Assembly (NCBI RefSeq): GCF_046119375.1
Contig: NW_027362763.1
Coordinates: 108,128,001 to 108,192,000 of the forward strand
DNA length: 64,000 nucleotides
Direction of reading: 5' to 3'
DNA from: Phyllobates terribilis
Taxonomy: Eukaryota
In this document: positions 14,731-53,526 of the stretch, piece after piece
How positions within the stretch are numbered: position 1 is the stretch's first letter
How the letters are laid out: every line of letters starts with the position of its first letter
The notes under the pieces: model-generated
The model's database searches: none
What the model was told of the DNA's origin: nothing
Seen by the model: the letters and a program-made list of their open reading frames with translations, nothing else
Position numbers and translations under genes: made by a program

Positions 14731-15850
14731 TATGGCGCCCCTGCGGGTTCAGTCGCAACACATTCCACTTCAGTGGGGGCAGGGCGAGATTGCTCCTGAG
14801 GGAGAGCACAGTCCCTGGTCCCTAGCTGGAGGGTGGAACCATGTAGTGGGTGTGGGTGGAGGACATAGTTTAGGGGAGCACTTCAGTAGGTGTATAAAAA
14901 GGGGAGCCATCTTGAAAAGTGTGGTCAGTCTGCAGTGAGAGGAGTTGGGAGCAGGAGCTCAGCAGGAGCTCTGCTCAGGAAGAGGGCCTAGAGAGAGGCC
15001 CAGGACCGACTGAAGGAGAGAGGAGCAAGAAGGAAGGCTTCAGGAGGAACGAGGGTATCCTAGGGGTACGGGCAGTGCTGGAGGCCACCCGTACGCCCGA
15101 ATCTGCAGGAACGTGGAAGGATCAAGCTGCAGAGGGAACAGGCCCCTAAACTACTGGAGAACTACAAGGCTTAGCTAGAAACCGGAGGCTTCTGTACTGT
15201 TAGGGTGCAGTTGCCACAGCCACAATTACATCGCCAAAAAGGTGGCCACAGAGGGTTCAGGGGACTGCAGGTAGCCCGACAAGACCCGAGGCTACCGGCT
15301 TGGGACACTGATTGTGAGGCGCAGGGCAGGAGGGTGAGAGCCAGCGCAGAGAGAAGGCACACAGAAGGAGGTCCCGTTAAGTGCCCTTGAATTACTTGAG
15401 GGATTGCTGAACCCCTCCCTGAGTAAGCACAGGACAACGTGGGAAGTTACACCGGTACCTGTAACTTGGATTGCAACAACTGTGAGTAAACTCTGAAGAC
15501 TGCACCCCACTGTCTCTGCGAATTACTACTGCGCCATCACCCCTGCACTACACAGCAACATCCATAACAACTCTGCACAGCCCTGGAGCTAAGCTCAACC
15601 TGTGGAGAGCTAAACCAACTCTGCTGCATTTACACCAGCTCCAGAGGACCTGCTCCGCAGCGGCGGCTCCCTTTAGCCGCATACCACAGGTGGCGTCACG
15701 AACTCTATACAAGAACTATAAATACCCTGTAAATAATATCCCCATTTGATTGACCGTCCTGGGTCACGGACCGGGTCACCGCCACTGTGACATCTCCCCT
15801 GGCAACGACCGACCGGGCACCGAGTACCCCACGGCCCAGGGGGCGTGTCA
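14731..15850 (+). mobile_element. 5' LTR of a Gypsy-group element
   Basis: Starts t(a/g)tggcgcccc and ends gggggcgtgtca. Homologous to the reverse-oriented LTRs at 24966-27309 and 43429-44707. TATA-like gtataaaaag at ~14892. Confidence 0.88.
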
Positions 15851-15853
15851 ACT

Positions 15854-15871
15854 TGGCATCACAAACAGGAT
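15854..15871 (+). promoter_or_regulatory. Primer-binding site complementary to the tRNA-Ser(CGA) 3' end
   Basis: TGGCATCACAAACAGGAT lies 3 nt after the LTR. It is a 16/18 match to the complement of the vertebrate tRNA-Ser(CGA) end ...ATCCTGTTCGTGACG-CCA (recalled sequence). Both mismatches are G>A at CpG. Confidence 0.8.
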
Positions 15872-16067: not shown

Positions 16068-17700
<1,633 letters not shown>

Positions 17701-24965: not shown

Positions 24966-27309
24966 TGACGCGCCCCCAGGGCCGTGGGGTACTCGGCAGC
25001 CTGGCCTCGATGGATGCCGGTGGGGGATATCACGGTGGCTGACCTGGTCCATGGCCCAGGGCGGTCAATAAAAGGGGGGGTTCTTTATAGGGGATTTGTA
25101 AGGTTTTCATGACGCCACCTGTGGAATGCGGCTAAAGGGGGGGCCGCCGCCGGAGCAGTCCTCTGGAGCTGATGCTACGGCAGCAGGGATGGTGTGGCTC
25201 TCCACAGGTAGAGCTAGCTCCAGGGCGGTGTAGGTAGTGTAAGTTGCTCTGGGCGTTGTAGTGCCGGGAGGGAAGGATGGCACAGATGAAAGAATGGACG
25301 GAGGCAGTGCGGTGCAGTCATCCGAGTTTTTACTCACAGTTCTTATGACAGTTCCACCGGTGCACTGTACGGGTGCCAGCCTCCCACGTCGCGCTGTGTT
25401 CACCAGGCAGGGGTTCAGCACTTCCTCAGACAGATTAGGAGCACCTGACAGAACCCCACTTTCTTGTGTTCCTAGCTACACCATCTTCACGCTGGGTCTT
25501 TCTCCCTCCTCTCCTGCGCTTCCCACACTCAATCCCGCTCGGGTGCTCTGAAGTCCCTCTTGTCTTGTTGGAGTTCCCGGACCTGCTTGACCCTCAATGA
25601 GGCTTCAGCAACTGACTATATAAGCCAGAAGCCTCCGGTTTTCCCAGCCGAGACTTAGAGTAACACGGCTGGACCAGGGGCGGGTCCCCATCTTGCGGCC
25701 TACGATCCCTATGTCTTTTGACAGATTTGGGGCGTACGGGTGCCGTCCCACACTCGCCGTACCCCCTAGGATCCCTTCTTTAGATCGGAGCCTACTCCTC
25801 TGCTCCCCTCCTGGGCCTCTAGGACTGGGCCCTGCTTGTGGAGCAGAGCTCCTAAAGAGACTCTGCTCCCTGACTGTTCTCCACTGACTAATCTCTCTGC
25901 CACCCTAAGATGGCCTCCATGTTTATATCTCACTCTGTAGTGCTCCTCTAAACTGCTTCTGACGCGCCCAGGGGATGGGGACGACTCGGCGCCCGGGCCT
26001 TGCTGTTAGATTTGGGGATGCCGCGGTGGCCGGCTCCCGGGGCCGTACTGTGGGGTCACTCTTAAAAACAAGGAATGGGGGGAAAGGTGTATGGAAAGGG
26101 GAAAGTTCGTGACGCCACCCGTGGTGTCTGGTGAGGATCACCAGCGCTGCTACAGTCCTCTGAGGCCGGTGGTCAGGCAGCTTAGTTGGTGCAGCTCCCC
26201 ACTGGTGGAGCGGGGCCTCAGGGCAGCGTAGGAGAAGGGATGCAGGACAGAGGGGACCCAGCCGGGTCAGAGGAAGAATAGGCACACTCACAACAGTTCA
26301 CTTCAGTACCTTTACTGGTGGTGTTTCAGGCACGATCCAGGGCACTGTAGGGTGAAGGGTGCATTTCAGGACTCTCCCCAGTGAGCGGATGTGGGGCCTC
26401 CTGTTTCTTGCCTTTTCCTGATAAGTTTATGACCTGCCTGGAGCTAGGCCTAACTTGGTGTCTGTCTTCCAATGGCTGACCTGGTGGTAGGGCCTTCTGA
26501 TGGAGTTCACACTCCCTGGTCTATTGGGCCTCAGTGACTCCTGACCCTGGTATATCAGTCAGCTTTTGGTGTTCCTAGGACATATAGTTCGCCAGGGGTT
26601 CCGGTAGTTTCTGCTGGTCATAGAGATCCCTGCAGACGCGGCCCCGGTGTCCAGTATATGATCTTGGGGTGAGCTGGCTAAGCTCCTCTGCCCCCTATGT
26701 AGCTCGCTTACTCCACTTGCCTTCGGCCGCGCTCGGTGGCCCTCACTAGGCTTCTCACTGGCAGTAGGCCTCGCTACTCTTCACCGCTCTTATGGCGTCG
26801 GCACGCCTTAGGCTCACTAGTCTGAGCTTTATGAGTCTGAACTCTCTCTAGAGGGACTGGAACTACCTCTGTCCCCTGAGGATAATGTTCTCTAGACTGC
26901 ACTGCCTAGCTCCAACCTCCCTATTTTTATCCCTATCCGGGCTCCCTCTGGTGGTCTGAGGTGGAAGGTGGAGGTGTGTGTATGCTATGAGGGCCTCTTG
27001 TGGAGGAATCCATCCATGCACCCCTCTAGGATCTGTGGCACCAATGTGCAGCAGGGCGCCACACTTCCTCCACCCACACCCACTACTGGTTACCCCCTAC
27101 CTCTGGGTTCCCCCCACTCCAGCCAGGGACAGGGCTCAGCAGCTACGCACGAGCATGTTGCCCTTTCAGCCGGCCTGGAGCAGTGTAGTGTTGGATGCAG
27201 GTGTTGGGGTTCCGGGCAGCACTCCCTTTTTTACCTGAGAGAAGGAGATACCATACCTCTGGGTGAGATACAGTACCTCTGTGGCGACTGAACCCTCAGG
27301 GGCGCAACA
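24966..27309 (-). mobile_element. Solo Gypsy LTR (outer), split by a nested solo LTR
   Basis: tgacgcgccccc at 24966 and ggggcgcaaca ending at 27309; flanks TATA / TATG. Once the insert is removed it is collinear with LTR 43429-44707. Confidence 0.85.
25960..27063 (-). mobile_element. Solo LTR of a related subfamily nested in the outer LTR
   Basis: tgacgcgccc ... gggcgccaca with an exact 4-bp TSD CTTC at 25956-59 and 27064-67. Confidence 0.9.
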
Positions 27310-31206: not shown

Positions 31207-31609
31207 GTAAAAACTTTTAAACATTATCTAAAATGATAAGTTGGTCAAATTTTTAAATCAGCTTTAGGCCACGTTCACACATTCAGTATTTGGTCAGTAT
31301 TTTCCATCAGTATTTGTAAGCCAAAACCAGGAGTGGAACAATCAGAGGAAAAGTATAATAGAAACACGTCACCACTTCTGTATTTATCACCCACTCCTGG
31401 TTTTGGCTTACAAATAATGATGTAAAATACTGACCGAATACTGAACGTGAGAACGTGGCCTTAATGATGGAATCATGAAAAGTCATGAATAGTGTAAAAA
31501 GAAACTCCTTTATAAATCAATAAAGAAAAAAAAAAGTAATTGATTATATTGGGTGTGTCGTATCTGTAATAGCTCTTGTTAAAAAGGAAATCATTATTAA
31601 AATGCTTAA

Positions 31610-32510: not shown

Positions 32511-33201
32511 TAAAATAGACTGTGACAGATACCTAGGGGTATGGTTCACACTGAGGTTCTTTGCTTAGTTTTTGGTGCAGAAAATCTCCAAATACACAAG
32601 GAGTTAAAAAAAACACGAGTTTTGATTAGAGAGTTGGAGAGTTTCAATTCCGAAAACTCAGCAAAAAAATATTTCAGTAATAATTTCCCCAAACTTTTTT
32701 TTAAAGGGATTGTCCGGTCATATGATAATGATGGCGTATCTTTAAAATAAGTTAGTTTTAGGCGTGAGCTGATCAATCAGCAGAGGATCAACTTTATGGC
32801 ATCACATGGTTGTAGCACAGCCAATCATGGGGGTTTTACCCGTTCCAGTATAAAAGATAAGTGCCGGCCAAGCAATGCTATTTAATCCTTTTACACGAAG
32901 GGATAGGAGATCAGAGCGCACATTGGCACAGAAAAAGGCCTAATCTGACTCTGGTGTACTGGCGTTGTGGGTGTTTTTTACACTTTTTTTTATTAAAACA
33001 ATGTTAACTAAATACCCTATGTTATTTTCATACACTATTACTATTTATTTACAAGGTATTTTCTCATTTTGTTTTTTTTGTTAGGTTCTGTCTATTAAAA
33101 GGCCACAGTGTGAATGCACACCAATGCATTCCACTTATACCAACATATGCTCCTTCTCATTTTTTTGGTCTTGTTGAGACCCCACTGTTGACATTATACA
33201 A

Positions 33202-33632
33202 CATCACTAAGCTGTGTGACTGTGAGTCCAGCACTGATGACATCATGCAGCATCACTAAGCTGTGTGACTGTGAGTCCAGCACTGATGACATCATACAGC
33301 ATCACTAACCTGTGTGGCTGTGAATTCAGCACTGATGACATCATACAGCATTACTAACCTGTGTGGCTGTGAATTCAGCACTGATGACATCATACAGCAT
33401 TACTAACCTGTGTGGCTGTGAATTCAGCACTGATGACATCATACAGCATCACTAAGCTGTGTGACTGTGAGTCCAGCACTGATGACATCATACAGCATCA
33501 CTAACCTGTGTGGCTGTGAATTCAGCACTGATGACATCATACAGCATTACTAACCTGTGTGGCTGTGAATTCAGCACTGATGACATCATACAGCATCACT
33601 AAGCTGTGTGGCTGTGAGTGCAGCACTGAAGT
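33202..33632. repeat. 49-bp tandem repeat (~9 copies); two more units follow at 38864-38965
   Basis: Unit catcactaagctgtgtgactgtgagtccagcactgatgacatcatacag, starting at 33202, 33251 and onward. Confidence 0.95.
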
Positions 33633-36600
33633 TGACGCGCCCCCTGGGCCGTGGGGTAACCGGAGCCGGGCCTTGTGGATGCTGGGGGTTGTAGTTGACG
33701 CGCCCCCTGGGCCGTGGGGTACCCGGAGCCGGGCCTTGTGGATGCTGGGGGTTGTAGTCACCGTGGCGGTGACCAGGTCCGTGACTCAGGGCGGTCAAAC
33801 CAGGGTAGTCTATGGGTGTCTCTGTTATATATAGTCCGACTACGCCACCTGTGGGATGCGGTTATTGGGAACCGCCGCTGCGGAGCAGTCCACTGAAGTT
33901 GGTGGTATGTGCAGCAAGGTGATGTGACTCCCCACAGGAAGTGTGGAGCTTCAGGGCAGCGTGTATGGATGATGGTGGTGATAGTGCCGGGATCAGTAAT
34001 GATAACACAGAGTCGTTGCAGTGCAGTCCTAGGGTCTTTACTGGTGGGAATTATATGGGCCCCAACGAGAGTACCGGCTAGTGATGAGGGCCTGGTCAGT
34101 CTGGGAGCAATCCTAGAATCCTCCTGGCCAGGTGGAGTTGTAGGCCTGCCGTTCTGACTGTACTCTTTGGCTATCCCGCTTATAGTCGTGTTGTAGCCCA
34201 CGTCCCTGAGTGTAACGTGCTGTGCTCACCCGTATGGCTGGCGACTCGGACCTTGTGTATTCCTCGCTCCTCTGTGGCAGTACGGGTCCTTTCGTGTGGC
34301 TGAGCCTCCGGGCTTCTGATGGGCCAGGAGACCTACAATCTCCTGCCGTGCGGTTTCTGCTGCTGGATATACAATCCCCACAGACCCGGTGTCCGGTTCA
34401 ATGTATATACTCCTGCTAGGACGAGCTCTGCCAGCTCCAGTCCTCAGCTCCTTGCTCCTTCGTGTCCTACTTGACTCCTCACACTAGACTCTCACTAGAC
34501 TAACCTAACCCCGCCTCCAGACCCAGTTATAAAGGGCAGGATCCTCCCCTTTCTGGTCTGGAGCAGGAGGTGTTGCATGTAATGTCTTCCTGACCAGGAA
34601 ACTCCTGTTTTGCTCCCAGACATGGTATTACTACCACTGTGGCAACCAGACCCTCTGGGGTGCCCCATTCCCCCCTAGTAAATTTCAGTACTCGGGGACT
34701 GAACATATTTTTCAAAATAACAGGTAACAATAAACAAGGTACATTAGAATATTACAAACATTACAGTCTTTAACAGGTTACAGTATGATCTGCAACCAGG
34801 TGTCCATTCCACTGAAACAAAGTGCAATCTGAGGGACCCGTCCCAAACCCTCAACGTAGGCCCTGGGGTGGCTGCAGGGCATAGATGATCCAGGCATTGG
34901 ACCACGTCTTCGGCCTCCTCCAACGGGTTTTCGTTCAGTGGTCTGTCACGAAGGGGCACTTTTACAAGTGCAACTATTTACAGGACAGTTTTTGGGCTGC
35001 TCACAGTCCTCAGCCACTGGGTCTTTTATATATATACCCCTACGGGTAACTAAATGCAACAGGAAGAGTGTCCAAGTCACCTAAATTGTCCATTGTAAGG
35101 CAAAACACATCAATAATTAAATACATGAAAATCGCACAAGAATAATATACCCCAGGGGCAACTATTTATACTATTGGTATTTCTAATTATTCACTGAACC
35201 TGACAGGGGCCTTGCCTTTGGTGCTACGTGTTGATCTGCATAGTACGGGAGTGTGGATGGTATCTATTTCTGCACTATCTGCTACCCTGTCAGTCCTACG
35301 TGTGGGTAGATTGTAAAACTGCCTTAACCTCTCCATGGAACTGACAAGTGTATCATTGGCTGGGCCTTCTTGCTCCACTCCAGCCGGGGATCCTTCTTCC
35401 GGGGATTCTTCTTGAGCAGGCTCTTCTGGGGCATTTACAGGTTCTACTTACTGTGGAGGGTCTACTGGCGTGGGTACGACAGGTTCACTGTTAGCAGAGG
35501 GTAGATTCTCCGGGTCTGCTGTTGATGAAACTTCTGCCTCCGGGGCCAAATGTTCTTCCAACTCTACTGGGACTTCTGCAGCTTCCTGCGGGGCTGGTTG
35601 GAGAAATGTAAGGACTGGCACAACTATTGCATTATTCACTTGCGTCCATGACCAAGGAAATTCTCAGAGTACGTGCTGACCATTTATTCCACTTCCTCTG
35701 CGGGTTGAGGGGTATCTTGGCCTTCTTCAGCATGCTGTAGCTGCTTGGGACATTTCTTCAGGTGGTCTCTGGAAACTGTTGCTGTCATTTCTCCTCCATC
35801 CTTACTTATGAGGTACACCTTGGTGTTGGCATGACTTGATGGTAGAATGGTGTACGGCTCTTTTTCCCACTGGTCATCCAATTTATGGAGCCGCCTTTTT
35901 CTCTTTGGGACATGCTCTCCAGGTGACAAAGGGGCAGCATGTTGATTGTAAGTCTTCTCTTGCCTTTCTCTTGCTTGGGACAGACTTCTTTCAACATTTT
36001 CTTGTACCTTACAGTATTGCTGTTGCCGCTCAGTGTCCCAATCCGCATCTGGTGAGGCGTCCTCTGGTGTCAGAACTCCCATATACAGACCGATGGGTAG
36101 CTTTCCAGGCCGTGCTCTCATCAGGTAAGCAGGTGTGCAGTTGGTGGAATTCACTGGGATATGATTGTAGAGGTCCACCAGGTCTGGAAACTTTTCTGGC
36201 CATAGGCTGCGTTCCTCCAGGGGCAACGTCTTCAGTAGGTCTATCACCACTTGATTCATCTTTTCACACATTCCGTTGGTCTGGGGATGATAAGGCGTTG
36301 TACGGAGTTCCTTGCAGCCGTACAGGTTGCAGAATTCCTGGAATACTTCCGCTTCGAAGGCCGGACCTTGGTCAGTTAGCACACGTTCTGGGTAACCATG
36401 CGGGCGGCAGAAGTGCTGTTGGAAAGCTCTGGCTGCTGTCTGAGCCATTTGGTCCTTGACTGGCACTACTACCAGGAACCGGGAGTAGTGGTCTACAATG
36501 GTGAGAGCGTAGACATAGCCTGACCTGCTCGGGGATAGCTTCACATGGTCTAGGGCTACCAGTTCGAGTGGCTGCTTGGTGATGATGGGCTGCAGGGGAG

Positions 36601-38863
36601 CCCTCTGGCCGTCACGGTCTTTTCTTCTCAGGTTGCATGGTCCGCATTCTCGACACCACCTCTCGAATGCTTTCCTCATGCCAGCCCAATAGAACCGTTC
36701 ACGTAGCAGGACTTCCAGCTTCTTCCATCCGAAGTGTCCTGCTCCATCGTGGTACGCTTCCAAGACCATTGACGCATCCCGCCTCGGGACTACCACCTGC
36801 CAGACCAGCTCATGTGTCCGGGAGTTGATGGCTCTTCGACACAGCTTCCCTTCATAGATGAACAGCTTGCCTTTTTTTTTCTACAGCTGCTTGGTCTCCT
36901 CAGTAGCATCTGGATCAGGGTGTGCGTCAGCTCGGGTCAGCAACTCTTTGACAAGGAGGACAGCCGGGTCACTGTCTTGTGTTTCTGCCCATCCATGGTG
37001 GGGCAATAGATTAAATGTGGCCTCCCTGTTGGCAGAGCACCTGTTCTTCACACAATGGGAGCACTGCTTTATCCCATGGCGGTGGAAAGAGGGGATCTCT
37101 ATCTCTTCCAGCTCCTCGAGGTCTTCTCCCCCGTCTGGCAAGTTAGGCATTCTGGACAGCGCATCTGCGTTTGCATTCTTGTGCCCAGCCCGGTACTTGA
37201 TGGTGAATTCGTAATTAGACAGTCGTGCCATCCATCTTTGTTCCAGGGCACCAAGTTTTGCAGCGTCCAGGTGTGTCAGCGGGTTATTATCCGTGAAGAC
37301 GGTGAATTTGGAGGAGGCGAGATAATGCTTGAAGCGCTCTGTCACGGCCCAGACTACGGCGAGGAACTCCAACTTGAAGGAGCTGTAGTTCTCTGGGTTC
37401 CTTTCTGTGGGCCGGAGCTTCCTGCTGGCATAGGCTATTACCCTTTCTCTGCCTTGTTGGATCTGGGACAGCACCGCTCCCAGTCCCACGTTGCTCGCGT
37501 CCGTGTGAAGGATGAAGGGCTGTCCATAATCAGGGTAGGCCAGGACCTCGTCTCCTGTGAGAGCCATCTTCAGCCTGGTGAAGGACTCGTCTTCCAGCTT
37601 GTCCCAATTGAATGGGGGTTTCTGGTTCTTGGCCTTTCTGGACTGGCCTATCAGGAGGTCCTGCATGGGTGCCGCCATCTTGGTGAAGCCTGGTATAAAC
37701 CTTCGGTAGTAGCCTACCAACCTGAGGAACTGCCGCACTTCTTTAATGGTGGAAGGTCTCGGCCAGTCCTTGATTAGGGTGATCTTGACGGGGTCTGGTG
37801 CTACACCGTCAGCGCTTACCACATGTCCTAAGTACTGTACTTTGTGCTTCAGCAGGTGGCACTTTGATGGCTTCACCTTCAGGCCAAAGCCAGCCAGGGC
37901 TTCAAACACTTCCGCCAGGTGCTTCAGATGATCCTCATATGTCTTGGAGAATACTATGACGTCATCCAGGTACAGGAGGACTGTCTCGAAATTCTTATGT
38001 CCTAGACAGCACTCCATGAACTGCTGGAAGGTTCCTGGGGTGTTGCAGAGCCCGAATGGCATGCAGTTGAACTCGCTGAGGCCCATCGGGGTGGTGAATG
38101 CGGTCTTTTCCTTATCTGCCTCTGCTACAGGAACCTGCCAATACCCACTAGTAAGATCCAAAGTAGAGAAATAAGTAGCAGATTTTAATGCAGCTAGTGA
38201 CTCCTCTATCCTGGGTAGCGGGTATGCATCTTTATGAGTTATGCGGTTGATTTGCCTGTAGTCTACACAAATTCTCATTGTGCCATCCTTTTTCTTTACA
38301 AGAACTAATGGAGCTGCCCAGGGGCTACAACTATCTCTTATTACCCCAGCCTCCTTCATCTCTCGTAACATCCCCTTGGCATTCTGATAGTGTGCTGGCG
38401 GTACAGGCCGGTACCTTTCTTTAATGGGTGGATGGTCTCCCGTGGGGATATGGTGTTGAACCCCCTTTACCTGCCCGAAGTCGAGTGGGTGAGCCTCCGG
38501 GCTTCTGATGGGGCCAGGAGACCTACAATCTCCTGCCGTGCGGTTTCTGCTGCTGGGTATGTAATCCCCACAGCCTCGGACTCCGGTGTCCGGATCTCTG
38601 TATGTACTCTGGCCAGGACGAGCTCTGCCAGCTCCAGTCCTCAGCTCCTTGCTCCTTCGTGTCCTACTTGATTCCTCACACAGAACTCAACTCTAGACTC
38701 ACTAACCCCGCCTCCAGACCCAGTTATAAAGGGCAGGATCCTCCCCTTTCTGGTCTGGGCAGGAGGTATTGCTTGTAATGTGTTCCTGACCAGGAAACCC
38801 CTGTTTTGCTCCCAGACATGGTATTACTAACACTGTGGCAACCAGACCCTCTGGAGTGTCACA
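33633..38863 (-). mobile_element. Gypsy LTR retrotransposon, gag/protease/PBS deleted: partial 5' LTR (38494-38863), pol, PPT (34668-34675), 3' LTR (33633-34667)
   Basis: RT-RNaseH-integrase order; purine tract AGGGGGAA directly before the 3' LTR on the minus strand; 38494-38863 is homologous to 34306-34667. Confidence 0.93.
35187..38493 (-). pseudogene. Gypsy pol (reverse transcriptase, RNase H, integrase)
   Basis: RT motifs SPWAAPLVLV, CVDYRQIN, LDLTSGYWQ and YLDDVIVF; RNase H TDASNVGLGAVL; integrase H-GHFG...C..C, LDHVKL, TDQG and YHPQTNGMCE. One in-frame TAG at 36881-83 separates the two large ORFs, and the C-terminal tail ends RSTRSTKGKAPVRFSE. Confidence 0.95.
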
Positions 38864-39812
38864 ATGACATCATACAGCATCACTAAGCTGTGTGACTGTG
38901 AATGCAGCACTGATGACATCATACAGCATTACTAAGCTGTGTGACTGTGAGTCCAGCACTGAAGTGAGATAAAACATTTGCCAGAAGCTGCAGAAGATCT
39001 GCCTTCGTGTGCCTGGCCTCTCACTATGATGAACACTCCTTACTCCTTTTCTCCCTCCATAAAGTTTAATAAATGGCTATACATGACTCTTTAGTAAGCT
39101 GGCAATACGTTTTGCTTTGGCCAAGATGTATTTCAGCTATTTTTAATGATAATAGTTAATAATCAGTTCAGAAGGTGAAAGGTGGAGAAGAAGTGGCTTA
39201 TAGTGGAGAAAGAAACATATTTCTCACAAAAGATATATTACATAGCAACTCTTTAAATCTTCTTTCCTGCCCTAATAGTTTGTTACAATGTATCAATGTG
39301 GTTAAATTTGGTGTCCAAACTCTTTTAGCTTACAGGGGATTGCCTAAACTGGATAAAATGGTAACAATCCTTCAGCTGTGGGTAGAAATAGGCCAGCATA
39401 TTTTGCTATTCACTAAGAGCAAGCAGAGGTCCAAAAATAGCTAGTATTAAAATCTTGAGGCTATTAAAAACATTTTCTAAAGCGATATAAAAGTTGCAGG
39501 ATGGTACAGAAACAATGAAGGTATCTATACATTGTTGAGGAATCAGTAACAAAGCGTAAGGCCACGGGCCCACTATCAGTTTTTCATCAGTATTTGGTCA
39601 GTATTTTTTCTCAGGAGTGGGAGCCAAAACCAGGAGAGGAACAATCAGAGAAAAGGTATAATAGAAACAAGTCACCAATTCTGCATTTATCACCCACTCC
39701 TGGTTTTGGCTCCCACTCCCCACTCCAAAGAAAAAATACTGACCGAATACTGATAGTGGGGCTGTGGCTTTAGAAAGGCAATCCTCAGTGATATGACTGT
39801 CTCTTGTTCTAG

Positions 39813-40533: not shown

Positions 40534-41898
40534 CCTCTTAAGGAGTGGTCCATTTTTCATTCTATTTTCCTCCAAAAGGCATATATTTTTTATCTTTCCT
40601 TGGATATAACGAGATCTCTTATTTTTTGCATGACAAGCTGTAGTTTTGAATGACACAGTTCATTTTACCACACAAGGTACTTTAAAATGGGGGGGGGGGG
40701 GGAAATCCATGTCTCGTGAAATTGAAGAAAAACTGAAAATGTCTCCTCTTTCAAAAAGTTAAAGGTGTTTTCCAGTTTTGGAAAAACCTGTTCCCCGGCT
40801 GCAGTTTGTTTTAAAAACCTAAATAAATCAAAACTGTCCTTTTCTCACCCTCACCAGGTCAAGCACTTTGTCTCCACCGCTGCTCCGGGTTTCTGTTATT
40901 ATCTACAGTGCTGACGTCTTGTCGACAGAGCTGCAGCCAATCAGTGAGCTCAACAGCTCTGCCTGAGCTGATGGCAGGAGACGCTGAGCTCACTGATTGG
41001 CTGCAGCTGTGTTGACGAGACATCAGCACTGCAGACAATAACATAAACCGGGAGCAACAACTGAGATCCAGCGCTAAACCTGGGAAGGGTGAGTAAAGAA
41101 CAGTATGATTTTTTTTAAAACAAAACTGCAGCAGAAGGACAGGGGTTTTCCAAAAATAAAATAATAAAAATTTCCCCAAAAATTTGGGCTTCAGTCATGA
41201 TATTTTGTGATTCATAATTTTTTTACATTTTTTAGTCAATAGAGGGTCTTGTTTTTTGCATAACGAGCTGTAGTTTTTATTGGAACCATTTTGGTGTCAA
41301 TGCGACTTTTTAATCTCGTTTCATTTCAATTTTAAGGGCATAAAACATCACAAAAAAAAACAGGGATTTTGCCATCTCAAATTTTTTTGTTTCGGCGTTC
41401 ACCATGTGGGAAAAATATTTTATTAGTTCGGGCAGTTACACATGCAGCAGAACCAAATGTGTACATTTTTTCTTAATTTTTAGTTTTTGCAATTCATGTT
41501 TGGGAAAAAGTATGGGGTGATTTAAATGGTTATATAGATTTTTTTAGGGTAAAAAAAATAGTTTTTAATTTTTTATAAGTTTTTTTTTTTTAGTATCCTT
41601 ATGAGACTTAAACCTGCTTGATCAAATATAAAATAAACTGCAATACTGCCATAGGCTGGGCTTCTTCACAGGCCATGGGAACCGACTGGCACATCGTGAT
41701 CTAGTCATGCGGGTGGCCGATGGCCTCTGGAGTAACGGTTGCCATGTTGGAAGCCTTTTAAATTCCGCTATCAAGAATGGCAGCAGCAATTAAAAGGTTA
41801 AACTGCTGTGATCAGCGCTCTCTCCCATGGCACTAGTAATTAATCTGCGGTGATGATGCACGTCCACCATACATGTACGGCGGCAGGGATCAAGGAGG
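40534..41898. mobile_element. TTAA-flanked piggyBac-like non-autonomous element containing a nested palindromic MITE (~40760-41155)
   Basis: TTAA|CCTC ... GGAGG|TTAA; similar T-rich internal sequence at ~24250-24960. Confidence 0.55.
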
Positions 41899-43428
41899 TT
41901 AAAGAGACATGAAACTGTCTAAAAGAAGAATTCTATGTGTTGCCTATAGCAACCAATCATGTTTCAGCTTTCATTTTTCAGCAGCACTGAGAAATGAAAG
42001 CTGCGCTGTGATTGGTTGCTATGGGCAACACAGACAGCTCTTCTCTTAAACAGTTTCACGAATCTCTCCATTATGTATATACGATATATACACATTCTGT
42101 CGGAACTATTATATAAACTATTATAATTTTAGGGACAGATATACACAACTTAGGGCCCCTTTGCCAAATCAGTGTGTGTCCCCTTTAATTAAAGGGTTAT
42201 TCCAAGACTGCCAATATTTTTCACAAAGCAGTATCTACATGACTAGAATAATTATACTATACAAGCCCATTATAAAGCTTCTTTTTTTTGTGCCATTATC
42301 TCTTTTTTTCATCTGTGATCCAGCTGCACAGAACTGAATGGGCGGTCCTGTTCTTACCTGCTAAAACTACATTTCCCATCACACCCTGCTTCTCCTCAGT
42401 AAAAATGCTGAGTGAACGGCTCACAACTGAGCCCATTGCAGATGAAACGAGTGCAACCCACCATTGCTGTGCCATTGCGGCACAGCTGGAACTTTTCCAT
42501 TTTCTGAATGCCACCGCCATCCCATCCTTAAACTAATGGGTGGAGGGTTGCAATGGACAACGTCTATGGTGAACGTCAGTCATAAGCGTGAAAACCGCCA
42601 ATCAGTACCACAGGAAGAACGAACCACTCACCAGTGGAATAGGGGATGGGTATGACGCCCCTGGTGACGTGCGGATCATCATGGGTCATAAGGGGGCACA
42701 TATGAATCACCCCCATCTCTTTGCCCTCAGCGTGTGCTGGGCCATCCCCTGTGCTACATCATGGTGGAGGCATCACCACTTCTTTTGTCTTGAGCAGTAA
42801 AGGGGTTAATAGTAAATTCATTAGGGGTCTAGGAATTTGATTTGGGGGCCTTCAGTAACCCCCCAAATATATATAGAAAAAGGCGGGCATAACCCAAATT
42901 TTTTATAGAAATCAACCTATTGCATTCGCGACAAACCATTTGAGAACACAAGAGAAAGAGTATGCAATACACAGGGATCTCTAAGAAGTCCCAACATTTA
43001 TTGATATAACAACAAACAAAAAAAGAAATATAAAAACATTTAAAAAGCCAAAAGGCTAAAAAAACAGCTTATAATAAAGCATGGGCATTTTCTGCTCCTG
43101 AAGAAGCCACACTTGTGGCGATACACGTGGGGTCTGTTCCACCTGCTACTTTAGTATCGCTGGCACAGGTCTTCAACGCATTGTCCTTTTTGGACCTGTC
43201 TACTTTGGTTCCATATTGAATTCCCTTTAAATGTGTTGCCTTATACGCAGTGTTGTATTTGGGCATTACAATAGAGTATTCACTCACTGTTATTTTTCAC
43301 TTTAATAGGCTGATGTTTCATCATGCCCATTTATTCATCTTCATATACACATTGACAATTTAATAATAATGTGTATATATGTGATCTTGTGTGATCTTAT
43401 TTAATTATGGTGTTGTATATGACTAAGG

Positions 43429-44707
43429 TGATGCGCCCCCTTGGCCGTTGGGTACTCGGTAGCCAGGCCGGTCGGTGCTGGGGATGTCACGGTGGCAGTG
43501 ACCTGGTCCGTGACCCAGGGTGGTCAATTAAAGGAAAAGGTAAAAGGGGAATAAAGTTTTTAGAGATAATGTTCGTGACGCCACCTGTGGTATGCAGCTA
43601 TATGTGGCCGCCGCTGCGGAGCAGGTCCTCTGGAGCTGATGGTGACGCAGCAGAGTTGGTTCAGCTCTCCACAGGCAGAGCTAAGCTCCAGGGCAGTGTA
43701 TGATGAATTGTGCAGGTAGATGTTGTTGGTGCGGTGAAATGCAGGACTGGTGGCACAGCAATTATTCACAGACACAGTGGGGTGCAGTCTTCAGGTTTTA
43801 CTCACAGTTCTTAAGGTCTCCAAGTTACAGTCAACGGTGTGCAACTGCCCACATCGTCCTGTGTCCTCCGGGGTAGTGATCCAGCAAACTCTCAGGCATT
43901 TCAGGAGCACTTAGACGGGACCCCGTTCTATGTACCGTTCCTGGTCGTCTCACTGTGCTGGCTCTCACCCTCCTGCCCTGCACCTCACAATCAGTGTCCC
44001 AAGCCAGTGTACTCGGGCTTGTCGGGCGACTTGCAATCCCCTGGACCCTGTGTGGCCACCTTTTCAGCGATATAATTGTGGGTTTTGGCTGCAACACCTT
44101 GAAAATGCTGCAGCCTCCAGTTGGCTAGCTGAGTCTGGTTGTTCTCCACTAGTTTTGTGGCCGGTCCCCTTCTGCAGCCTGATCCCTCCACGTCAGCGTG
44201 AATTGGGGCGCACGGGTGGCTTCTGCACTCACCGTGCCCCTGGGATCCCTTCTGTCTCTCTGGAGCCTGTCCCACTGCTCCTCTCTCCTCTTTCCTCACT
44301 TTCCTCCTGGGCCTCTCTCACTAGGCCCGACTCCTCTCTCTCTACTGAACTCCTGCTCCAAGCACTGGAGCCAGGAGCATGGACCCTTCTGCACTGCTCT
44401 CCCAAGCAGGACTGGAACCTTCTAAATGTTTCTCTCTGTCTTTTATACCCTTTCTGTCTGTGCTCCACTCAACTTCTTCCTCCACCCACACCCACTACAT
44501 GGTTCCCCCTCTCTTGGTTCCCCCCCTTCTAGCCAGGGACAGGGCTCAGCAGTGGACAAGTGCATCTTGCCCCTCCTGCTGGTCTGGAGTGGTGTAATGT
44601 TGGATGTAGGTGTGTGGTAGTACTCCGTCCTTACCTGAGAGTGGGGTACCACACCCCTGGGTGAGATGCAGTACCTCTGTGGCAACTGGACCTGCAGGGG
44701 CGCCACA
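43429..44707 (-). mobile_element. Solo Gypsy LTR (1279 bp)
   Basis: TGATGCGCCCC ... GGGGCGCCACA with an exact TSD AAGG at 43425-28 and 44708-11. Confidence 0.95.
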
Positions 44708-45441
44708 AAGGCAATCATTGCATTTCTGTGAGGGTTTCATTGCTTGTTCTTTTATCCTTTGGGGTTTTTAAATGTTTTTATATTTCTTTTTTTTGTCTTG
44801 TTGTTATATCAATAAAATTGTGTGACTTTTTAGAGATTCCTGTGTATTGCATACTCTTTCTCTTATGTTCTCAGAAGGCCCCCAATCGTCACTATCTTGC
44901 TGTTTGTCCCCATCCTTCATAGTCGAGGACAGTAATGAATACCATTCCTGGTGGTAAAGGGGTTAAAAGTAATGCAAAATCTTATAAATGTATGACAAAT
45001 GCTAAATAGCATAACCCAATAAGGCCCCTAATAGGCATTTCACGTATTTTTATTTCAAGTCAAAGTTTGGACCACCAACAATTTAAAAAAAAATTAGAAG
45101 CCCTGGAAAAAAACGTAAAATAAGAGAAAATACTAGACTTGTTTGGGGTTTTTCTTATAAGAGTGTTTCAAAGTCAGACCTCAAAAATGATCATGGACTA
45201 TCTTACCCCCTTCAGTTGCTATCAAATTTCTAGGATACCTGACCAAAGACTTCCATGATACCATCCACTGTGCCTGGTATAACACAAGGTCTGGTTGTCC
45301 ATACATCCAAGTAAGATTTACTGATGACCTAAAGAGTGGTCACTTCCAATCAAAATTGGTTCAAATTTACCTTTAAAAGTTTTACAATATTTTTTTTACA
45401 TGTTTCATAAACATGAAATTGTATTTTTTTTACTTCTCCAG

Positions 45442-48671: not shown

Positions 48672-48830
48672 GTAAAGACTGCAGATCATAGGCATTGGTA
48701 AAGCTTCAATTCCCCCTGTGAATAAATTCACTAAACGAGCTTCAAAAATTATATTACTTCACAAAACTAATATAATACATCATAGTATGTACATAATGAC
48801 TGCAAATGCAATACTCACTCTTTATACAAT

Positions 48831-50977
48831 AATATAACTACTATAATACTGCCCCTATGTCCAAGAATATAACTGCTATAATACTGCTCCTATATACAAA
48901 AATATAACTACTATAATACTGCCCCCTATGTTCAAGAATATAACTACTATAATACTGCCCCCATGAACAAGAATATAACTACTATAATACTGCCCCTTTG
49001 TACAAGAATATAACTACTATAATACTGCCCCCTATGTTCAAGAATATAACTACTATAATACTGCCCCCATGAACAAGAATATAACTACTATAATACTGCC
49101 CCTTTGTACAAGAATATAACTACTATAATACTGCTCCTATGTACAAAAATATAACTACTATAATACTGCCCCCTATGTTCAAGAATATAACTACTATAAT
49201 ACTGCCCCCATGAACAAGAATATAACTACTATAATACTGCTCCTATGTACAAAAATATAACTACTATAATACTGCCCCCTATGTCCAAGAATATAACTAC
49301 TATAATACTGCCCCCTATGTCCAAGAATATAACTACTATAATACTGCCCCCTATGTACAAGAATATAACTACTATAATGCTGCTCCTATGTACAAGAATA
49401 TAACTACTATAATACTGCTCCTGTGTACAAGAATATAACTACTATAATACGGCTCCTATGTACAAGAATATAACTACTATAATACTGCTCCTATGTACAA
49501 AAATATAACTACTATAATACTGCCCCCTATGTTCAAGAATATAACTACTATAATACTGCCCCCATGAACAAGAATATAACTACTATAATACTGCTCCTAT
49601 GTACAAGGATATAACTACTATGATACTGCTCCTATGTACAAGAATATAACTACTATAATACTGCTCCTATGTACAAGAATATAACTACTATAATACTGCT
49701 CCTATGTACAAGAATATAACTACTATAATACTGCCCCTATGTACAAGAATATAACTACTATAATACTGCCCCTATGTACAAGAATATAACTACTATAATA
49801 CTGCCCCATATGTACAAGAATATAACTACTATAATACTGCCCCCTATGTACAAGAATATAACTACTATAATACTGCCCCTATGTACAAGAATATAACTAC
49901 TATAATACTGCCCCATATGTACAAGAATATAACTACTATAACACTGCCCCTATGTACAAGAATATAACTACTATAATACTGCCCCTATGTACAAGAATAT
50001 AACTACTATAATACTGCCCCATATGTACAAGAATATAACTACTATAATACTGCTCCTATGTACAAGACTATAACTACTATAATACTGCCCCTATGTACAA
50101 GAATATAACTACTATAATGCTGCCCCATATGTACAAGAATATAGCTACTATAATACTGCTCCTATGTACAAGAATATAACTACTGTATTCCTGCCCCTAT
50201 GTACAAGAATATAACTACTATAATGCTGCCCCATATGTACAAGAATATAACTACTATAATACTGCCCCATATGTACAAGAATATAACTACTATAATACTG
50301 CCCCCTATGTACAAGAATATAACTACTATAATACTGCCCCTATGTACAAGAATATAACTACTATAATACTGCCCCATATGTACAAGAATATAACTACTAT
50401 AATACTGCCCCCTATGTACAAGAATATAACTACTATAATACTGCCCCTATGTACAAGAATATAACTACTATAATACTGCCCCATATGTACAAGAATATAA
50501 CTACTATAACACTGCCCCTATGTACAAGAATATAACTACTATAATACTGCCCCTATGTACAAGAATATAACTACTATAATACTGCCCCATATGTACAAGA
50601 ATATAACTACTATAATACTGCTCCTATGTACAAGACTATAACTACTATAATACTGCTCCTATGTACAAGAATATAACTACTATAATACTGCCCCTATGTA
50701 CAAGAATATAACTACTATAATGCTGCCCCATATGTACAAGAATATAGCTACTATAATACTGCTCCTATGTACAAGAATATAACTACTGTATTCCTGCCCC
50801 TATGTACAAGAATATAACTACTATAATGCTGCCCCATATGTACAAGAATATAACTACTATAATACTGCCCCATATGTACAAGAATATAGCTACTATAATA
50901 CTGCTCTTATGTACAAGAATATAACTACTATAATACTGCTCCTATGTACAAGAATATAACTACTGTATTCCTGCATA
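48831..50977. repeat. 35-36-bp intronic minisatellite (~60 copies)
   Basis: Unit aagaatataactactataatactgcccctatgtac. Confidence 0.97.
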
Positions 50978-52560: not shown

Positions 52561-53526
52561 GAAATAATAAAAATTAAAATTTAGGTTTTTAGGAGCAAAA
52601 CAGTAATAATGCAGTGACATGACAAGAATCTGCATAACTAATCATATGCTAAATAGTTGAAAGTCAAATTTATGTATGAGATAGCCAAGATGATGTCTAT
52701 AACATGATTGTAGTCTCAAGTTGGAAGCAGTAGTGGATGGTGAGATATGGAGCCTGAAAGTCAAAAGTTCAAAGCATTGTTACTACTGTTGAGCGAGCAT
52801 GCTCGACACTGCTCGGTACTCGCCCGAGCATCACGCTACTCGGGATGTTCGGCGAGCACCGAGCATTTCCGGGTTACTCGGGCGGGAGCTCGGGTCTCCG
52901 CCCTGCATGTTTGGCGCTCTTTACAGAGCCAATGAACATGCAGGGATTGCCAGCCAGTCACTGTAATGCCGCAGCCATGTTGCTTGTGGGCATTACAGTG
53001 ATTGGCTGGCCGCACAGCGTCACCTCGAGTATTTAAAACCGGGCGCCGCCATCTTGGACACAGTCGCTCCGGATTAGACAGTGTAGGGACAGCGCTGCTG
53101 ATTTAGGGAGAGATATAAACTGCGAAATAGTTAGTGTAGGGTCTGTAAAGGCTGCCAGAACAAACAAACAGTCCTTTTCAGGACTAATATCCATCCCAGA
53201 TATCAGGCAGGCAGGCTGTATAGGACAGTGGTCCCCAACCTTTTTTGCACCAGGGACCGGCTTGAAGCAAGATCATTTTTCCATGGCCCAGCAAGGAGGG
53301 GGTGGGGTGGGCGGGGCTTTGGTCATATGGGGGCGGGGTAATGGAGGGATTTGGAGTTTAGTGCATACTTATCATATAGTGTAGACCAGGTCCCCGCCAG
53401 GAGCTATGCCAGGAGCCCCACATAATGTGCTGTGCCAGGAGCCGCATCACTGAGGCCCCATCACGCCCTGCAGCAGGACAGGGCAGCTGTCCTGACAGCT
53501 GCTGTTCAGCTGCATTTACTTCATCC

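What the first reader, a model, noticed from the sequence alone, without database searches (positions are those of the whole stretch)
43486..43583. Gypsy LTRs encode a tRNA-Ser acceptor-stem + CCA mimic (second PBS plus tRNA 5'-end match) inside U5
Seen: on the LTR antisense strand, GTCACGGTGGC (43486-96) is followed about 75 nt later by GTTCGTGACGCCA (43571-83). The same pair recurs at 25029/25106, 26020/26105 and, in sense orientation, at 15691 (TGGCGTCACGAAC) / 15781. The spacer between them varies freely in length and sequence. Recalled knowledge: vertebrate tRNA-Ser(CGA) begins GTCACGGTGGCC and ends CCTGTTCGTGACG+CCA, and the element's own PBS (15854) is complementary to it. So each LTR holds a 13-nt copy of the PBS and an 11-nt match to the primer's 5' end. 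Antisense, these pair into the exact 7-bp acceptor stem with discriminator G and a DNA-encoded CCA, but with no D, anticodon or T arms. Inference, three options: (a) a self-encoded primer or RNase P/Z substrate from antisense LTR transcription; (b) a bipartite, extended tRNA-capture site, analogous to the Ty1/Ty3 extended PBS interactions; (c) a decoy for 3'-CCA tRNA fragments, which are known to silence LTR elements through the PBS. I am not aware of this arrangement being described.
Basis: partly seen in the sequence, partly recalled or inferred. Interest (0 to 1): 0.85.

Follow-up and report, generated by a model that had tools for sequence, protein, structure and literature searches.

The report
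Primer-tRNA docking motifs in Gypsy LTRs
Five LTR copies of a frog Gypsy retrotransposon carry, inside U5, a short spare copy of their tRNA-Ser primer-binding site and the complement of that tRNA's 5' end; this most likely helps to dock the primer, much like known extra tRNA contacts in HIV-1, Ty1, Ty3 and Drosophila Gypsy.

Summary
The motif pair is real. [quoted passage not shown] About 75 nt further on lies the complement of the first 11 nt of the same tRNA-Ser.

Published tRNA fragments confirm both tRNA ends. The true PBS after the only 5' LTR (15854) matches the same tRNA. An invariant AGTAAA poly(A) signal places both motifs in U5. They are among the best-conserved LTR segments, though not uniquely so, and half of the 'free' spacer is conserved.

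The fifth copy has switched its inner PBS to another tRNA-Ser (12/12), and its partner motif has shifted the same way.

No tRNA body lies between the motifs, and consensus folding prefers a helix that buries the 'CCA'. An antisense tRNA mimic is therefore unlikely.

Best reading (about 0.45): a multipartite primer-docking site. U5 captures the acceptor 5' strand displaced when tRNA-Ser anneals to the PBS, and a spare upstream PBS sits beside it, possibly born from read-through copying of the primer. I rate it a new variant of a known kind. The evidence comes from five related copies only.

The parts
43429..44707 (-). LTR copy c2, a solo LTR of 1279 bp. Sense is the minus strand. It holds the finding's coordinates.
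   Evidence: It starts TGTGGCGCCCC and ends GGGGGCGCATCA, an imperfect terminal inverted repeat. It is flanked by CCTT on both sides. It is 78% identical to c1.
43425..43428 (.). Target-site duplication CCTT of c2. The second copy is at 44708-44711.
   Evidence: Read directly.
43570..43583 (-). Inner PBS copy ('PBS1') of c2. It is complementary to the last 14 nt of tRNA-Ser(CGA), including CCA.
   Evidence: 14-nt uninterrupted complement of the published human tRF-Ser-CGA-013. The 13-mer is exact in 3 copies against 0.01 expected.
43486..43503 (-). Complement of the tRNA-Ser(CGA) 5' end. GCCACCGTGAC (43486-96) pairs with tRNA nt 1-11. The GGTCAC just upstream (43498-503) can pair with tRNA nt 15-19 across a small bulge.
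   Evidence: 11-nt exact complement of the mouse tRF5-20-SerCGA-2. RNAduplex gives -27.9 kcal/mol with the tRNA 5' 20-mer.
43579..43589 (-). 5' strand of 'helix A' (CACAGGTGGCG). It overlaps the first 5 nt of PBS1. Its partner strand is 43488-43497.
   Evidence: RNAalifold predicts a 10-bp helix with every pair kept in 3-5 of 5 copies and no compensatory change.
43498..43527 (-). Conserved U5 block between the motifs. It contains GTCACGG (43508-14), identical to tRNA nt 1-7 and able to mask the 5'-end complement, and a small TGACC/GGTCA hairpin.
   Evidence: Mean pairwise identity 0.85 in four copies. Hairpin pairs show changes on both sides in c4.
43797..43802 (-). Putative poly(A) signal AGTAAA of c2, marking the R/U5 border about 20 nt downstream.
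   Evidence: Invariant in 5 of 5 copies at -347 to -374 from the LTR end and followed by a GT-rich stretch. The border is inferred, not mapped.
14733..15850 (+). LTR copy c1, the 5' LTR of element A. PBS1 is at 15691-15703 and the tRNA 5'-end complement at 15781-15791 (1 CpG-type change).
15854..15870 (+). True PBS ('PBS2') of element A, 3 nt (ACT) after the LTR end.
   Evidence: 15/17 to the reverse complement of tRF-Ser-CGA-013; both mismatches are CpG to CpA. Similarity to a tRNA-Ser T loop continues to about 15878, judged against other human tRNA-Ser.
24966..25957 (-). LTR copy c3, truncated at its 5' end by c4. PBS1 is at 25105-25117 (2 changes) and the 5'-end complement at 25029-25039 (1 change).
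25960..27309 (-). LTR copy c4, the most diverged subfamily. PBS1 at 26105-26117 is exact. The partner motif at 26020-26032 is complementary to tRNA nt 5-13 instead of 1-11.
33696..34667 (-). LTR copy c5, the 3' LTR of Gypsy element B. Only its last ~270 nt align with c1-c3.
   Evidence: A purine-rich tract lies just upstream of its start.
33836..33847 (-). PBS1 of c5, TGGCGTAGTCGG. It is a 12/12 complement of the 3' end of human tRNA-Ser-AGA/TGA, a different acceptor stem from c1-c4.
   Evidence: RNAduplex gives -24.0 kcal/mol with the AGA/TGA 3' end against -15.1 with the CGA 3' end.
33754..33767 (-). Partner motif of c5, GCCACGGTGACTAC. GCCACG and ACTAC together complement nt 1-11 of tRNA-Ser-AGA/TGA, interrupted by 3 nt. 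It differs from c2 at three positions, and all three move towards that tRNA.
   Evidence: The duplex with the AGA/TGA 5' 20-mer is -19.6 kcal/mol against -10.7 to -18.4 in the other copies, though c5 still scores -22.4 with the CGA 5' end.
33633..33695 (-). Tandem second copy of the last 63 nt of the c5 LTR. The repeat runs from inside GACTAC, the 3' edge of the partner motif, to the LTR end.
   Evidence: TRF reports period 63, 2.0 copies, 98%. Read.
35684..38482 (-). pol remnant of element B (RT, RNase H, integrase). It has one in-frame stop in 933 codons and no frameshift in this stretch. gag, protease, PBS and the R-U5 part of the 5' LTR are missing through one deletion.
   Evidence: Pfam RVT_1, RT_RNaseH, Integrase_H2C2 and rve. 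tblastn with the pol of L065. Stop count.
38481..38863 (-). U3 part of the 5' LTR of element B, fused directly to RT.
   Evidence: 91% identical to 34292-34662. Read.

Best explanation
The two motifs form a multipartite docking site for the element's own primer, tRNA-Ser, on the sense-strand genomic RNA.

Shown:
- The LTR ends at ...GTCA.
- A PBS for tRNA-Ser follows 3 nt later in the one 5' LTR present.
- U5 contains, about 60 nt upstream of that PBS, an 11-nt exact complement of the tRNA's first 11 nt, rising to 16 pairs when the adjacent GGTCAC is included.
- About 75 nt further upstream lies a 12-14-nt second copy of the PBS.

Inferred mechanism. When the tRNA's 3' end anneals to the PBS, its acceptor stem is unzipped. 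The freed 5' strand is then captured by the U5 motif. This stabilises the open primer and places the 3' OH for initiation. The logic is that of the HIV-1 primer activation signal (PAS), but it acts on the acceptor stem and not the T arm.

Before the tRNA arrives, the U5 motif is probably masked by tRNA-like sequences of U5 itself: helix A with CACAGGUGGCG, or the local GUCACGG hairpin.

The inner PBS copy is a second site for the tRNA's 3' end. It may be an alternative or holding site. Together with the 5'-end complement it is plausibly the two surviving ends of a read-through copy of the whole primer made during plus-strand synthesis.
For: (1) Identity. Both motifs match published tRNA-Ser(CGA) ends, and the PBS at 15854 matches the same tRNA.

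(2) They lie in U5, upstream of the PBS, where known extra tRNA contacts of retroviruses lie.

(3) Conservation. Mean pairwise identity is 0.82-0.83 for the two motifs and 0.94 for the 7 nt before the inner PBS, against 0.36, 0.52 and 0.55 for the adjacent segments. The U5 module is the only part of the LTR that still aligns between c5 and c1-c3.

(4) Primer tracking. c5 carries a 12/12 match to a different tRNA-Ser at the inner PBS. Its partner motif differs from c2 at three positions, all towards the 5' end of that tRNA. HIV-1 shows the same kind of PAS adaptation after a primer switch.

(5) Position 7:66. On the sense strand the two motifs face each other as A x C, and on the antisense strand as G.U, exactly as in the tRNA. 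Each motif is therefore a Watson-Crick complement of one tRNA strand and is not tuned to pair with the other motif on the RNA.

(6) c4 keeps the core but extends its complementarity to tRNA nt 12-13 in place of nt 1-4.

(7) The motif:tRNA duplex (-24 to -28 kcal/mol) beats the internal mask (-15 to -17).

(8) Relatives use three different tRNA-Ser acceptor types as PBS (L065-L067), so primer switching within tRNA-Ser is usual in this clade.

(9) Precedent exists for extra tRNA sites in Ty1, Ty3 and Drosophila Gypsy.

(10) The 63-nt duplication in c5 runs from the 3' edge of the motif to the start point of minus-strand synthesis. That is what a stall at a tRNA:motif duplex followed by a template switch would leave.
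Against: - There are only five copies, all from one window and related by descent. The primer switch is a single lineage.
- c5's true PBS is deleted, so its primer is not known.
- c5's partner motif still pairs better with the old tRNA (-22.4) than with the new one (-19.6).
- Other U5 blocks are equally conserved (0.79-0.81).
- The motif is also explained, in two halves, by internal pairings: helix A and the GTCACGG/CCGTGAC hairpin.
- Helix A shows no compensatory change, so neither it nor the masking idea is demonstrated.
- No role for the inner PBS copy follows necessarily from this model, and a PBS copy inside the LTR should promote faulty strand transfer.
- No comparable motif was seen in the leaders of L065-L067. 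Their U5 was not available.
- The host's tRNA-Ser genes were not examined.
Confidence: 0.45

Rival explanations
1. Relic only. The region from the inner PBS to the partner motif descends either from a reverse-transcribed full-length copy of the primer (read-through of the tRNA in plus-strand strong-stop synthesis) or from an older PBS. It was swallowed into U5 when priming moved to a downstream PBS. It persists because it has become part of the U5 RNA fold, and it has no present contact with tRNA.
For: - The order and orientation are those of a complete antisense tRNA copy: complement of the 3' end first, complement of the 5' end last.
- The span of 89-103 nt compares with 85 nt for tRNA-Ser plus CCA.
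- Different subfamilies keep different parts of the tRNA's first 19 nt.
- A 13-nt PBS directly after the LTR is the norm in relative L067, and the inner PBS is preceded by CCACA+GG, which looks like an LTR end plus spacer.
- U5 is a structured domain with three helices that show compensatory changes.
Against: - Nothing tRNA-like is left in the interior.
- The inner PBS switched to a perfect 12-nt match with another tRNA-Ser after the extension. That is hard to explain without continued templating or selection by tRNA.
- The present LTR ends form a good terminal inverted repeat, whereas CCACA shares only 5 nt with it.
Confidence: 0.22
2. Plain U5 structure. The motifs are strands of conserved intramolecular helices of the leader RNA or of strong-stop DNA. 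Their likeness to tRNA ends is a by-product: any sequence able to pair with a PBS must resemble the acceptor stem.
For: - RNAalifold places GCCACCGTG in a 10-bp helix with CACAGGTGGCG, kept in all five copies.
- CCGTGAC also has a perfect 7-bp local partner, GTCACGG.
- CCACAGG has a further partner, CCTGTGG, about 95 nt upstream.
- Neighbouring helices show real covariation.
Against: - The 11-nt run is one uninterrupted complement of the tRNA, whereas the internal helices each explain only part of it.
- The 7:66 position is mismatched on the sense RNA.
- The inner motif matches the PBS at 13-14 of 13-14 positions, including positions that tell a PBS from a copy of the tRNA's 5' strand.
- c5's change weakens helix A (G-G at one pair) while improving the fit to the new tRNA.
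Confidence: 0.15
3. An antisense LTR transcript folds into an acceptor-stem minihelix with an encoded CCA. It serves as a self-made primer or as an RNase P/Z or CCA-enzyme substrate. A variant: the same hairpin forms in minus-strand strong-stop DNA, which physically is this strand.
For: On the antisense strand the 7:66 pair is G.U, as in the tRNA, and c2 has the exact 7-bp stem, G discriminator and CCA. The antisense strand does exist as single-stranded DNA during replication (established knowledge of reverse transcription).
Against: - No D, anticodon or T arm, and no hit with ARAGORN or Rfam even at E up to 10.
- The stem is absent from every minimum-free-energy fold.
- The consensus antisense fold pairs GGUGGC with GCCACC, burying the CCA.
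- Only one of five copies has the intact stem.
- No A/B-box-like internal promoter is visible.
- The true PBS matches at least 17 nt of a real tRNA.
Confidence: 0.05
4. The inner PBS copy is a decoy that soaks up 3' tRNA fragments which would otherwise silence the element through its PBS.
For: 3' tRFs ending in CCA do target PBS sequences of LTR elements (review PMC7472051, listed). The inner copy offers 12-14 nt of complementarity.
Against: A site on the same RNA adds a target and does not protect one. The model does not explain the partner motif or its position. Nothing in the sequence speaks for it.
Confidence: 0.04
5. DNA-level regulatory sites. The conserved block is a cluster of nuclear-receptor half-sites (TGACC, GGGTCA, AGGTCA). 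GGTCACGGTGGC resembles the imperfect oestrogen response element of TFF1.
For: The literature search for the 11-mer returned ERE papers (e.g. PMC4027214). Several half-sites are visible.
Against: - The sites lie about 800 nt downstream of the conserved TATA box, in U5.
- c4 changes the half-site letters but keeps the pairing.
- This does not explain the 13-nt PBS identity or the switch in c5.
Confidence: 0.04

Closest known systems
HIV-1 primer activation signal (PAS) and anti-PAS
   Same: A short motif in U5, upstream of the PBS, complementary to a part of the primer tRNA that is freed when the 3' end anneals. It is masked by pairing within the leader and adapts when the primer is switched (PMC1865047).
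   Different: The PAS has 8 nt and pairs with the T arm. Here 11-16 nt pair with the acceptor 5' strand and the start of the D arm. No experiment exists here. HIV-1 has no second PBS copy.
Ty1 bipartite or extended PBS
   Same: A short PBS (10-13 nt) supplemented by further tRNA-complementary segments near it (PMC5371799; PMC3592414, listed).
   Different: By my own knowledge the Ty1 boxes lie downstream of the PBS and pair with the T and D arms of initiator tRNA-Met. Here the extra sites lie upstream in U5 and pair with both acceptor strands of tRNA-Ser.
Ty3 5'-3' bipartite PBS and the two tRNA-Lys sites of Drosophila Gypsy
   Same: Same superfamily. One tRNA has two separate binding sites on the genomic RNA.
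   Different: There the second site lies at the 3' end of the RNA and pairs with a different part of the tRNA, bridging the two genome ends. Here both extra sites lie in U5, and one of them repeats the PBS itself.
Tf1-type self-priming
   Same: An upstream sequence of the same RNA is complementary to the PBS.
   Different: Tf1 uses the first 11 nt of the transcript and no tRNA (my own knowledge; mentioned). Here internal complementarity to the PBS is only 6-7 nt, and the PBS matches at least 17 nt of a tRNA including CCA.
HIV-1 tRNA-like element near the PBS
   Same: A piece of the leader imitates part of the primer tRNA (PMC5113203, PMC5689005).
   Different: That element imitates the anticodon arm and binds the synthetase. 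Nothing here was tested for protein binding, and the likeness here is to the acceptor stem.

Membership tests
Ty3/Gypsy LTR retrotransposon | pol domain order RT, RNase H, integrase | tested here: met
   Pfam RVT_1, RT_RNaseH, Integrase_H2C2 and rve on 38371-35684, minus strand. The best relatives are anuran Gypsy-type proteins.
Ty3/Gypsy LTR retrotransposon | LTRs with TG...CA ends, terminal inverted repeat and target-site duplication | tested here: met
   The ends are TGTGGCGCCCC... and ...GGGGGCGCATCA. c2 has the 4-bp duplication CCTT. c4 and element B lack a duplication.
Ty3/Gypsy LTR retrotransposon | tRNA PBS just after the 5' LTR and a polypurine tract before the 3' LTR | tested here: met
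   The PBS is at 15854, 3 nt after c1. A purine run precedes c5. Each was seen once only.
Ty3/Gypsy LTR retrotransposon | gag and protease | tested here: not met
   They are deleted in element B. tblastn with the gag of relatives finds nothing in the window. They are absent from these copies, not necessarily from the family.
tRNA gene or tRNA-like structure (antisense strand) | Cloverleaf with D, anticodon and T arms | tested here: not met
   ARAGORN finds 0 genes. Rfam gives no hit at gathering score or at E up to 10 on 43420-43620 and 15660-15960.
tRNA gene or tRNA-like structure (antisense strand) | Acceptor stem with a free 3' CCA in the favoured fold | tested here: not met
   It is in no minimum-free-energy fold. 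The consensus fold pairs the CCA.
Multipartite PBS / PAS-type primer contact | Complementarity to the primer tRNA outside the PBS | tested here: met
   11 nt exact, up to 16 pairs, to the tRNA-Ser 5' end, plus a 12-14-nt second site for the 3' end.
Multipartite PBS / PAS-type primer contact | Located on the genomic RNA near the PBS (U5 or leader) | tested here: inconclusive
   U5 is inferred from an invariant AGTAAA and a GT-rich element. Transcript ends are not mapped.
Multipartite PBS / PAS-type primer contact | Changes together with primer identity | tested here: inconclusive
   One lineage (c5) switched at both motifs. Its true PBS is missing.
Multipartite PBS / PAS-type primer contact | tRNA annealing to the site and an effect on initiation | not testable with these tools
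   Needs biochemical data.
Tf1-type self-priming element | At least 11 nt of the transcript's 5' end complementary to the PBS, with no tRNA match | tested here: not met
   The PBS matches tRNA-Ser at 15/17 including CCA. The best internal complement is 6-7 nt.

The most novel reading that the evidence does not exclude
This Gypsy lineage initiates reverse transcription by unzipping the acceptor stem of tRNA-Ser and holding each strand on a separate site of its RNA. It also keeps a spare, working PBS inside U5. Initiation could then start at either PBS, giving two LTR lengths, and the inner site would act as the place where new tRNA-Ser isoacceptors are tried out. That would explain the frequent primer switches in the clade.
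Probability: 0.2. Interest if true: 0.75.

Novelty: new variant of a known kind. Interest (0 to 1): 0.55.

Why it matters
Extra contacts between primer tRNA and template are known from a handful of model elements: HIV-1, RSV, Ty1, Ty3 and Drosophila Gypsy. They always involve the T, D or anticodon arms.

A vertebrate Gypsy family whose U5 carries complements of both acceptor-stem strands, one of them a duplicate of the PBS, would add a new geometry for opening the primer. It would also give a natural system, rich in copies, in which co-evolution of primer and template can be read from genome sequence alone.

It also warns annotators that a PBS-like match inside an LTR need not mark an LTR boundary.

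Tried and rejected
(1) More copies. One scan of metagenome contigs with an 18-nt LTR pattern that left the acceptor part free gave 63 loci. All were unrelated bacterial coding sequence. One viral-contig scan gave a chance hit.

(2) A protein search with a spurious 200-aa ORF of the LTR, meant to pull in LTR DNA, found nothing.

(3) The closest pol and integrase relatives are in dendrobatid and other anuran genomes, but their DNA could not be fetched because the files are too large.

(4) Logan and ENA contigs of more distant relatives (L065-L068) gave PBS types but no U5. L068 was too rearranged to use.

(5) tRNA origin of the interior. ARAGORN and Infernal were negative. I did not align the interior to a full-length tRNA-Ser, because that would have meant pasting a long string that has no reference.

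(6) TATA-like words in the variable spacer first suggested that the inner PBS might lie in U3. I rejected this because a conserved TATA box lies about 960-1020 nt before the LTR end in c1-c3, with a TTTATAAC at -838 in c5 and none found in c4. An invariant AGTAAA lies at about -360 in all five copies.

(7) CTCF or E-box readings of CCACAGGTGGCG were considered by eye only and dropped.

(8) I ran no random-mutation or reverted-state null model for c5's three changes, because that would have meant making changed or ancestral versions of the element.

(9) A literature search for 'second PBS' was swamped by phosphate-buffered saline.

Every tRNA string used in scripts was copied.
Full report
WHAT IS THERE

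The window is repeat-rich anuran DNA. The one intact pol stretch (38371-35684, minus strand; RT, RNase H, integrase) is closest to proteins of Phyllobates, Ranitomeya and Bufo.

Self-comparison and reading of the ends give five LTR copies of one Gypsy lineage:
- c1, 14733-15850 (+): a 5' LTR followed by ACT and a PBS at 15854.
- c2, 43429-44707 (-): a solo LTR with target duplication CCTT. It holds the finding.
- c3, 24966-25957 (-): truncated by c4.
- c4, 25960-27309 (-): a much diverged subfamily.
- c5, 33696-34667 (-): the 3' LTR of element B, the element that carries the pol.

All five start TG and end CA, with an 11-15-nt terminal inverted repeat, so the LTR 3' boundary is firm.

THE OBSERVATION

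The 13-mer is exact in c1, c2 and c4 (0.01 expected) and has two changes in c3. The 11-mer is exact only in c2. It has one change in c1 and c3 and two in c4. Most changes are CpG-type transitions. The copies are related by descent, so the recurrence is inheritance, not repeated chance.

THE tRNA

Full-text searches for the window's own letters found these published sequences:
- the human fragment tRF-Ser-CGA-013, TCCTGTTCGTGACGCCA;
- the mouse fragment tRF5-20-SerCGA-2, GTCACGGTGGCCGAGTGGTT;
- complete human tRNA-Ser-AGA/TGA sequences.

The PBS after c1 matches the reverse complement of the CGA 3' end at 15/17, and both mismatches are CpG to CpA. The host's own tRNA genes could not be examined.

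WHERE IN THE LTR

TATA-like words in the variable spacer made me doubt U5. Two features settle it in favour of U5. A TATA box lies about 960-1020 nt before the LTR end in c1-c3. An AGTAAA hexamer is invariant in 5 of 5 copies at -347 to -374 and is followed by a GT-rich stretch. This puts the R/U5 border at about -340. Both motifs then lie in a U5 of about 330 nt. This is inference from signals, not mapping.

CONSERVATION

Mean pairwise identities in alignment A1:

| Segment | Identity |
|---|---|
| 7 nt before the inner PBS | 0.94 |
| Inner PBS | 0.82 |
| Partner motif | 0.83 |
| Segment before the inner PBS region | 0.55 |
| Variable half of the spacer | 0.36 |
| Segment after the partner motif | 0.52 |
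| Upstream U5 blocks | 0.70-0.79 |
| LTR end | 0.81 |

The second half of the spacer is also conserved (0.85 in four copies). The motifs are thus conserved above their neighbours but are not unique peaks. The last ~270 nt of U5 are the only part of the LTR that still aligns between c5 and c1-c3.

THE SWITCH IN c5

c5's inner motif is TGGCGTAGTCGG, a 12/12 complement of the 3' end of tRNA-Ser-AGA/TGA. Its partner motif differs from c2 at three positions within 16 nt. Each change moves towards the complement of that tRNA's first 11 nt, which is then present in full but interrupted by 3 nt.

In energy terms the fit to the new tRNA rises to -19.6 kcal/mol, against -10.7 to -18.4 in the other copies. 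The fit to the old tRNA remains -22.4 kcal/mol. This is one lineage, and c5's own PBS is lost, so I call it suggestive.

It is still hard to explain unless the inner site stayed in contact with tRNA after it became part of the LTR. Relatives L065, L066 and L067 have PBS sequences for three different tRNA-Ser acceptor types, so such switches are common in the clade.

WHICH STRAND, WHICH PARTNER

- No tRNA body lies between the motifs.
- The acceptor-like helix is in no minimum-free-energy fold of either strand.
- RNAalifold on U5 gives three helices with compensatory changes, so U5 is a structured domain. It also gives an invariant 10-bp helix A between CACAGGUGGCG, which overlaps the first 5 nt of the inner PBS, and CGCCACCGUG. 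On the antisense strand this helix buries the 'CCA'.
- Where the tRNA has G7.U66, the two motifs face each other as A x C on the sense RNA and as G.U on the antisense strand. Each motif is therefore an exact Watson-Crick complement of one tRNA strand and is not tuned to pair with its partner on the RNA.
- The inner motif has the PBS letter, not the letter of the tRNA's 5' strand, at the discriminating positions.
- The complementarity to the tRNA's 5' end extends across a small bulge into the conserved GGTCAC. The total is 16 pairs and -24 to -28 kcal/mol, stronger than the internal mask at -15 to -17.
- c4 keeps the core but extends towards tRNA nt 12-13.

MECHANISM

I favour a multipartite primer-docking site, with confidence 0.45.

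Shown: the complementarities, their position, their conservation and one co-switch.

Inferred: annealing of the tRNA's 3' end to the PBS frees the acceptor 5' strand. The U5 motif, about 60 nt upstream, then captures that strand. Before that, the motif is masked by tRNA-like sequences of U5.

This is the logic of the HIV-1 PAS, which is masked in the leader and adapts after a primer switch. Extra tRNA sites are documented for Ty1, Ty3 and Drosophila Gypsy.

The inner PBS is a second site for the tRNA's 3' end. Its order, orientation and distance relative to the partner motif (89-103 nt, against 85 nt for tRNA-Ser with CCA) are those of a complete read-through copy of the primer. That origin is plausible but unproven.

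The copies seen here must all have been primed at or beyond the LTR end, because the inner PBS is present in a 3' LTR and in a solo LTR.

A FOOTPRINT

The last 63 nt of c5 are duplicated in tandem. One boundary lies inside GACTAC, the 3' edge of the partner motif. The other lies at the LTR end plus ACT, the point where minus-strand synthesis starts. A stall at a tRNA:motif duplex followed by a template switch would leave exactly this. It may also be coincidence.

RIVALS
- A relic kept only as part of the U5 fold (0.22).
- Plain intramolecular structure, with a tRNA likeness that is a by-product (0.15).
- An antisense minihelix or strong-stop DNA hairpin (0.05).
- A tRF decoy (0.04).
- Nuclear-receptor sites (0.04). 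The 11-mer resembles the TFF1 oestrogen response element.

LIMITS
- Five related copies in one window.
- No host tRNA set.
- No U5 from relatives.
- No further frog DNA could be fetched.
- I searched the held literature only briefly and found no description of this arrangement.

I also declare a slip. I recalled some tRNA-Ser letters from memory in my reasoning before retrieving them from papers.

Noticed in passing
window 33183-33629 and 38864-38962: The same 49-bp minisatellite lies on both sides of Gypsy element B (9.1 copies on one side, 2 on the other). The element therefore sits inside the array. There is no target duplication, and the 3' LTR is followed by ACT, the same 3 nt that separate LTR and PBS in c1. 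It looks as if the ends were joined unprocessed.
   Followed up: partly
window 33630-33758: Tandem duplication of the last 63 nt of the 3' LTR of element B (98% identity).
   Followed up: yes
window 59673-64000: 133-bp satellite with 32.6 copies at 96% identity, running off the window end.
   Followed up: no
window 48810-50964: AT-rich tandem array with a 35-bp unit (also 71 and 106 bp) and about 61 copies.
   Followed up: no
window 16063-17705: Tc1/mariner-type transposon with terminal inverted repeats of about 141 nt, inserted about 210 nt after the PBS of element A. It carries Sleeping-Beauty-like HTH and Tc3 transposase domains on the minus strand, and the transposase is in several pieces.
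   Followed up: partly
window 5388-6783 and 53620-54724: G-rich (20-22 bp) and C-rich (20-30 bp) minisatellites. The long ORFs listed over them (e.g. 53425-54732) have no Pfam match and are probably artefacts of the repeats.
   Followed up: no
window 7485-7701, 31283-31444, 39557-39766; also 1-306, 20382-21439, 40776-41155, 41910-42058: A short repeat family with palindromic structure (MITE-like) and several large inverted repeats.
   Followed up: no
window 42941-43066 and 44745-44873: Solo LTR c2 lies between two arms of a 90% inverted repeat, so it probably inserted into another foldback-type element.
   Followed up: no
window 25957-27335: LTR c4 sits inside LTR c3. c3 resumes just beyond c4 with what looks like its first ~20 nt. 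About 110 nt of c3 are missing and c4 has no target duplication.
   Followed up: partly
L067:1-100 and L066:100-125: Relative L067 has a 13-nt tRNA-Ser-AGA/TGA PBS right after its LTR. About 55 nt downstream it has a degenerate second PBS-like stretch preceded by CCCACAGT, much like the context of the inner PBS in the window. L066 has a tRNA-Ser PBS-like 17-mer inside the called gag ORF.
   Followed up: partly
window 43486-43527 and homologous sites: The conserved U5 block holds several nuclear-receptor half-sites. GGTCACGGTGGC equals the first 12 of the 13 nt of the imperfect TFF1 oestrogen response element found by the literature search.
   Followed up: no
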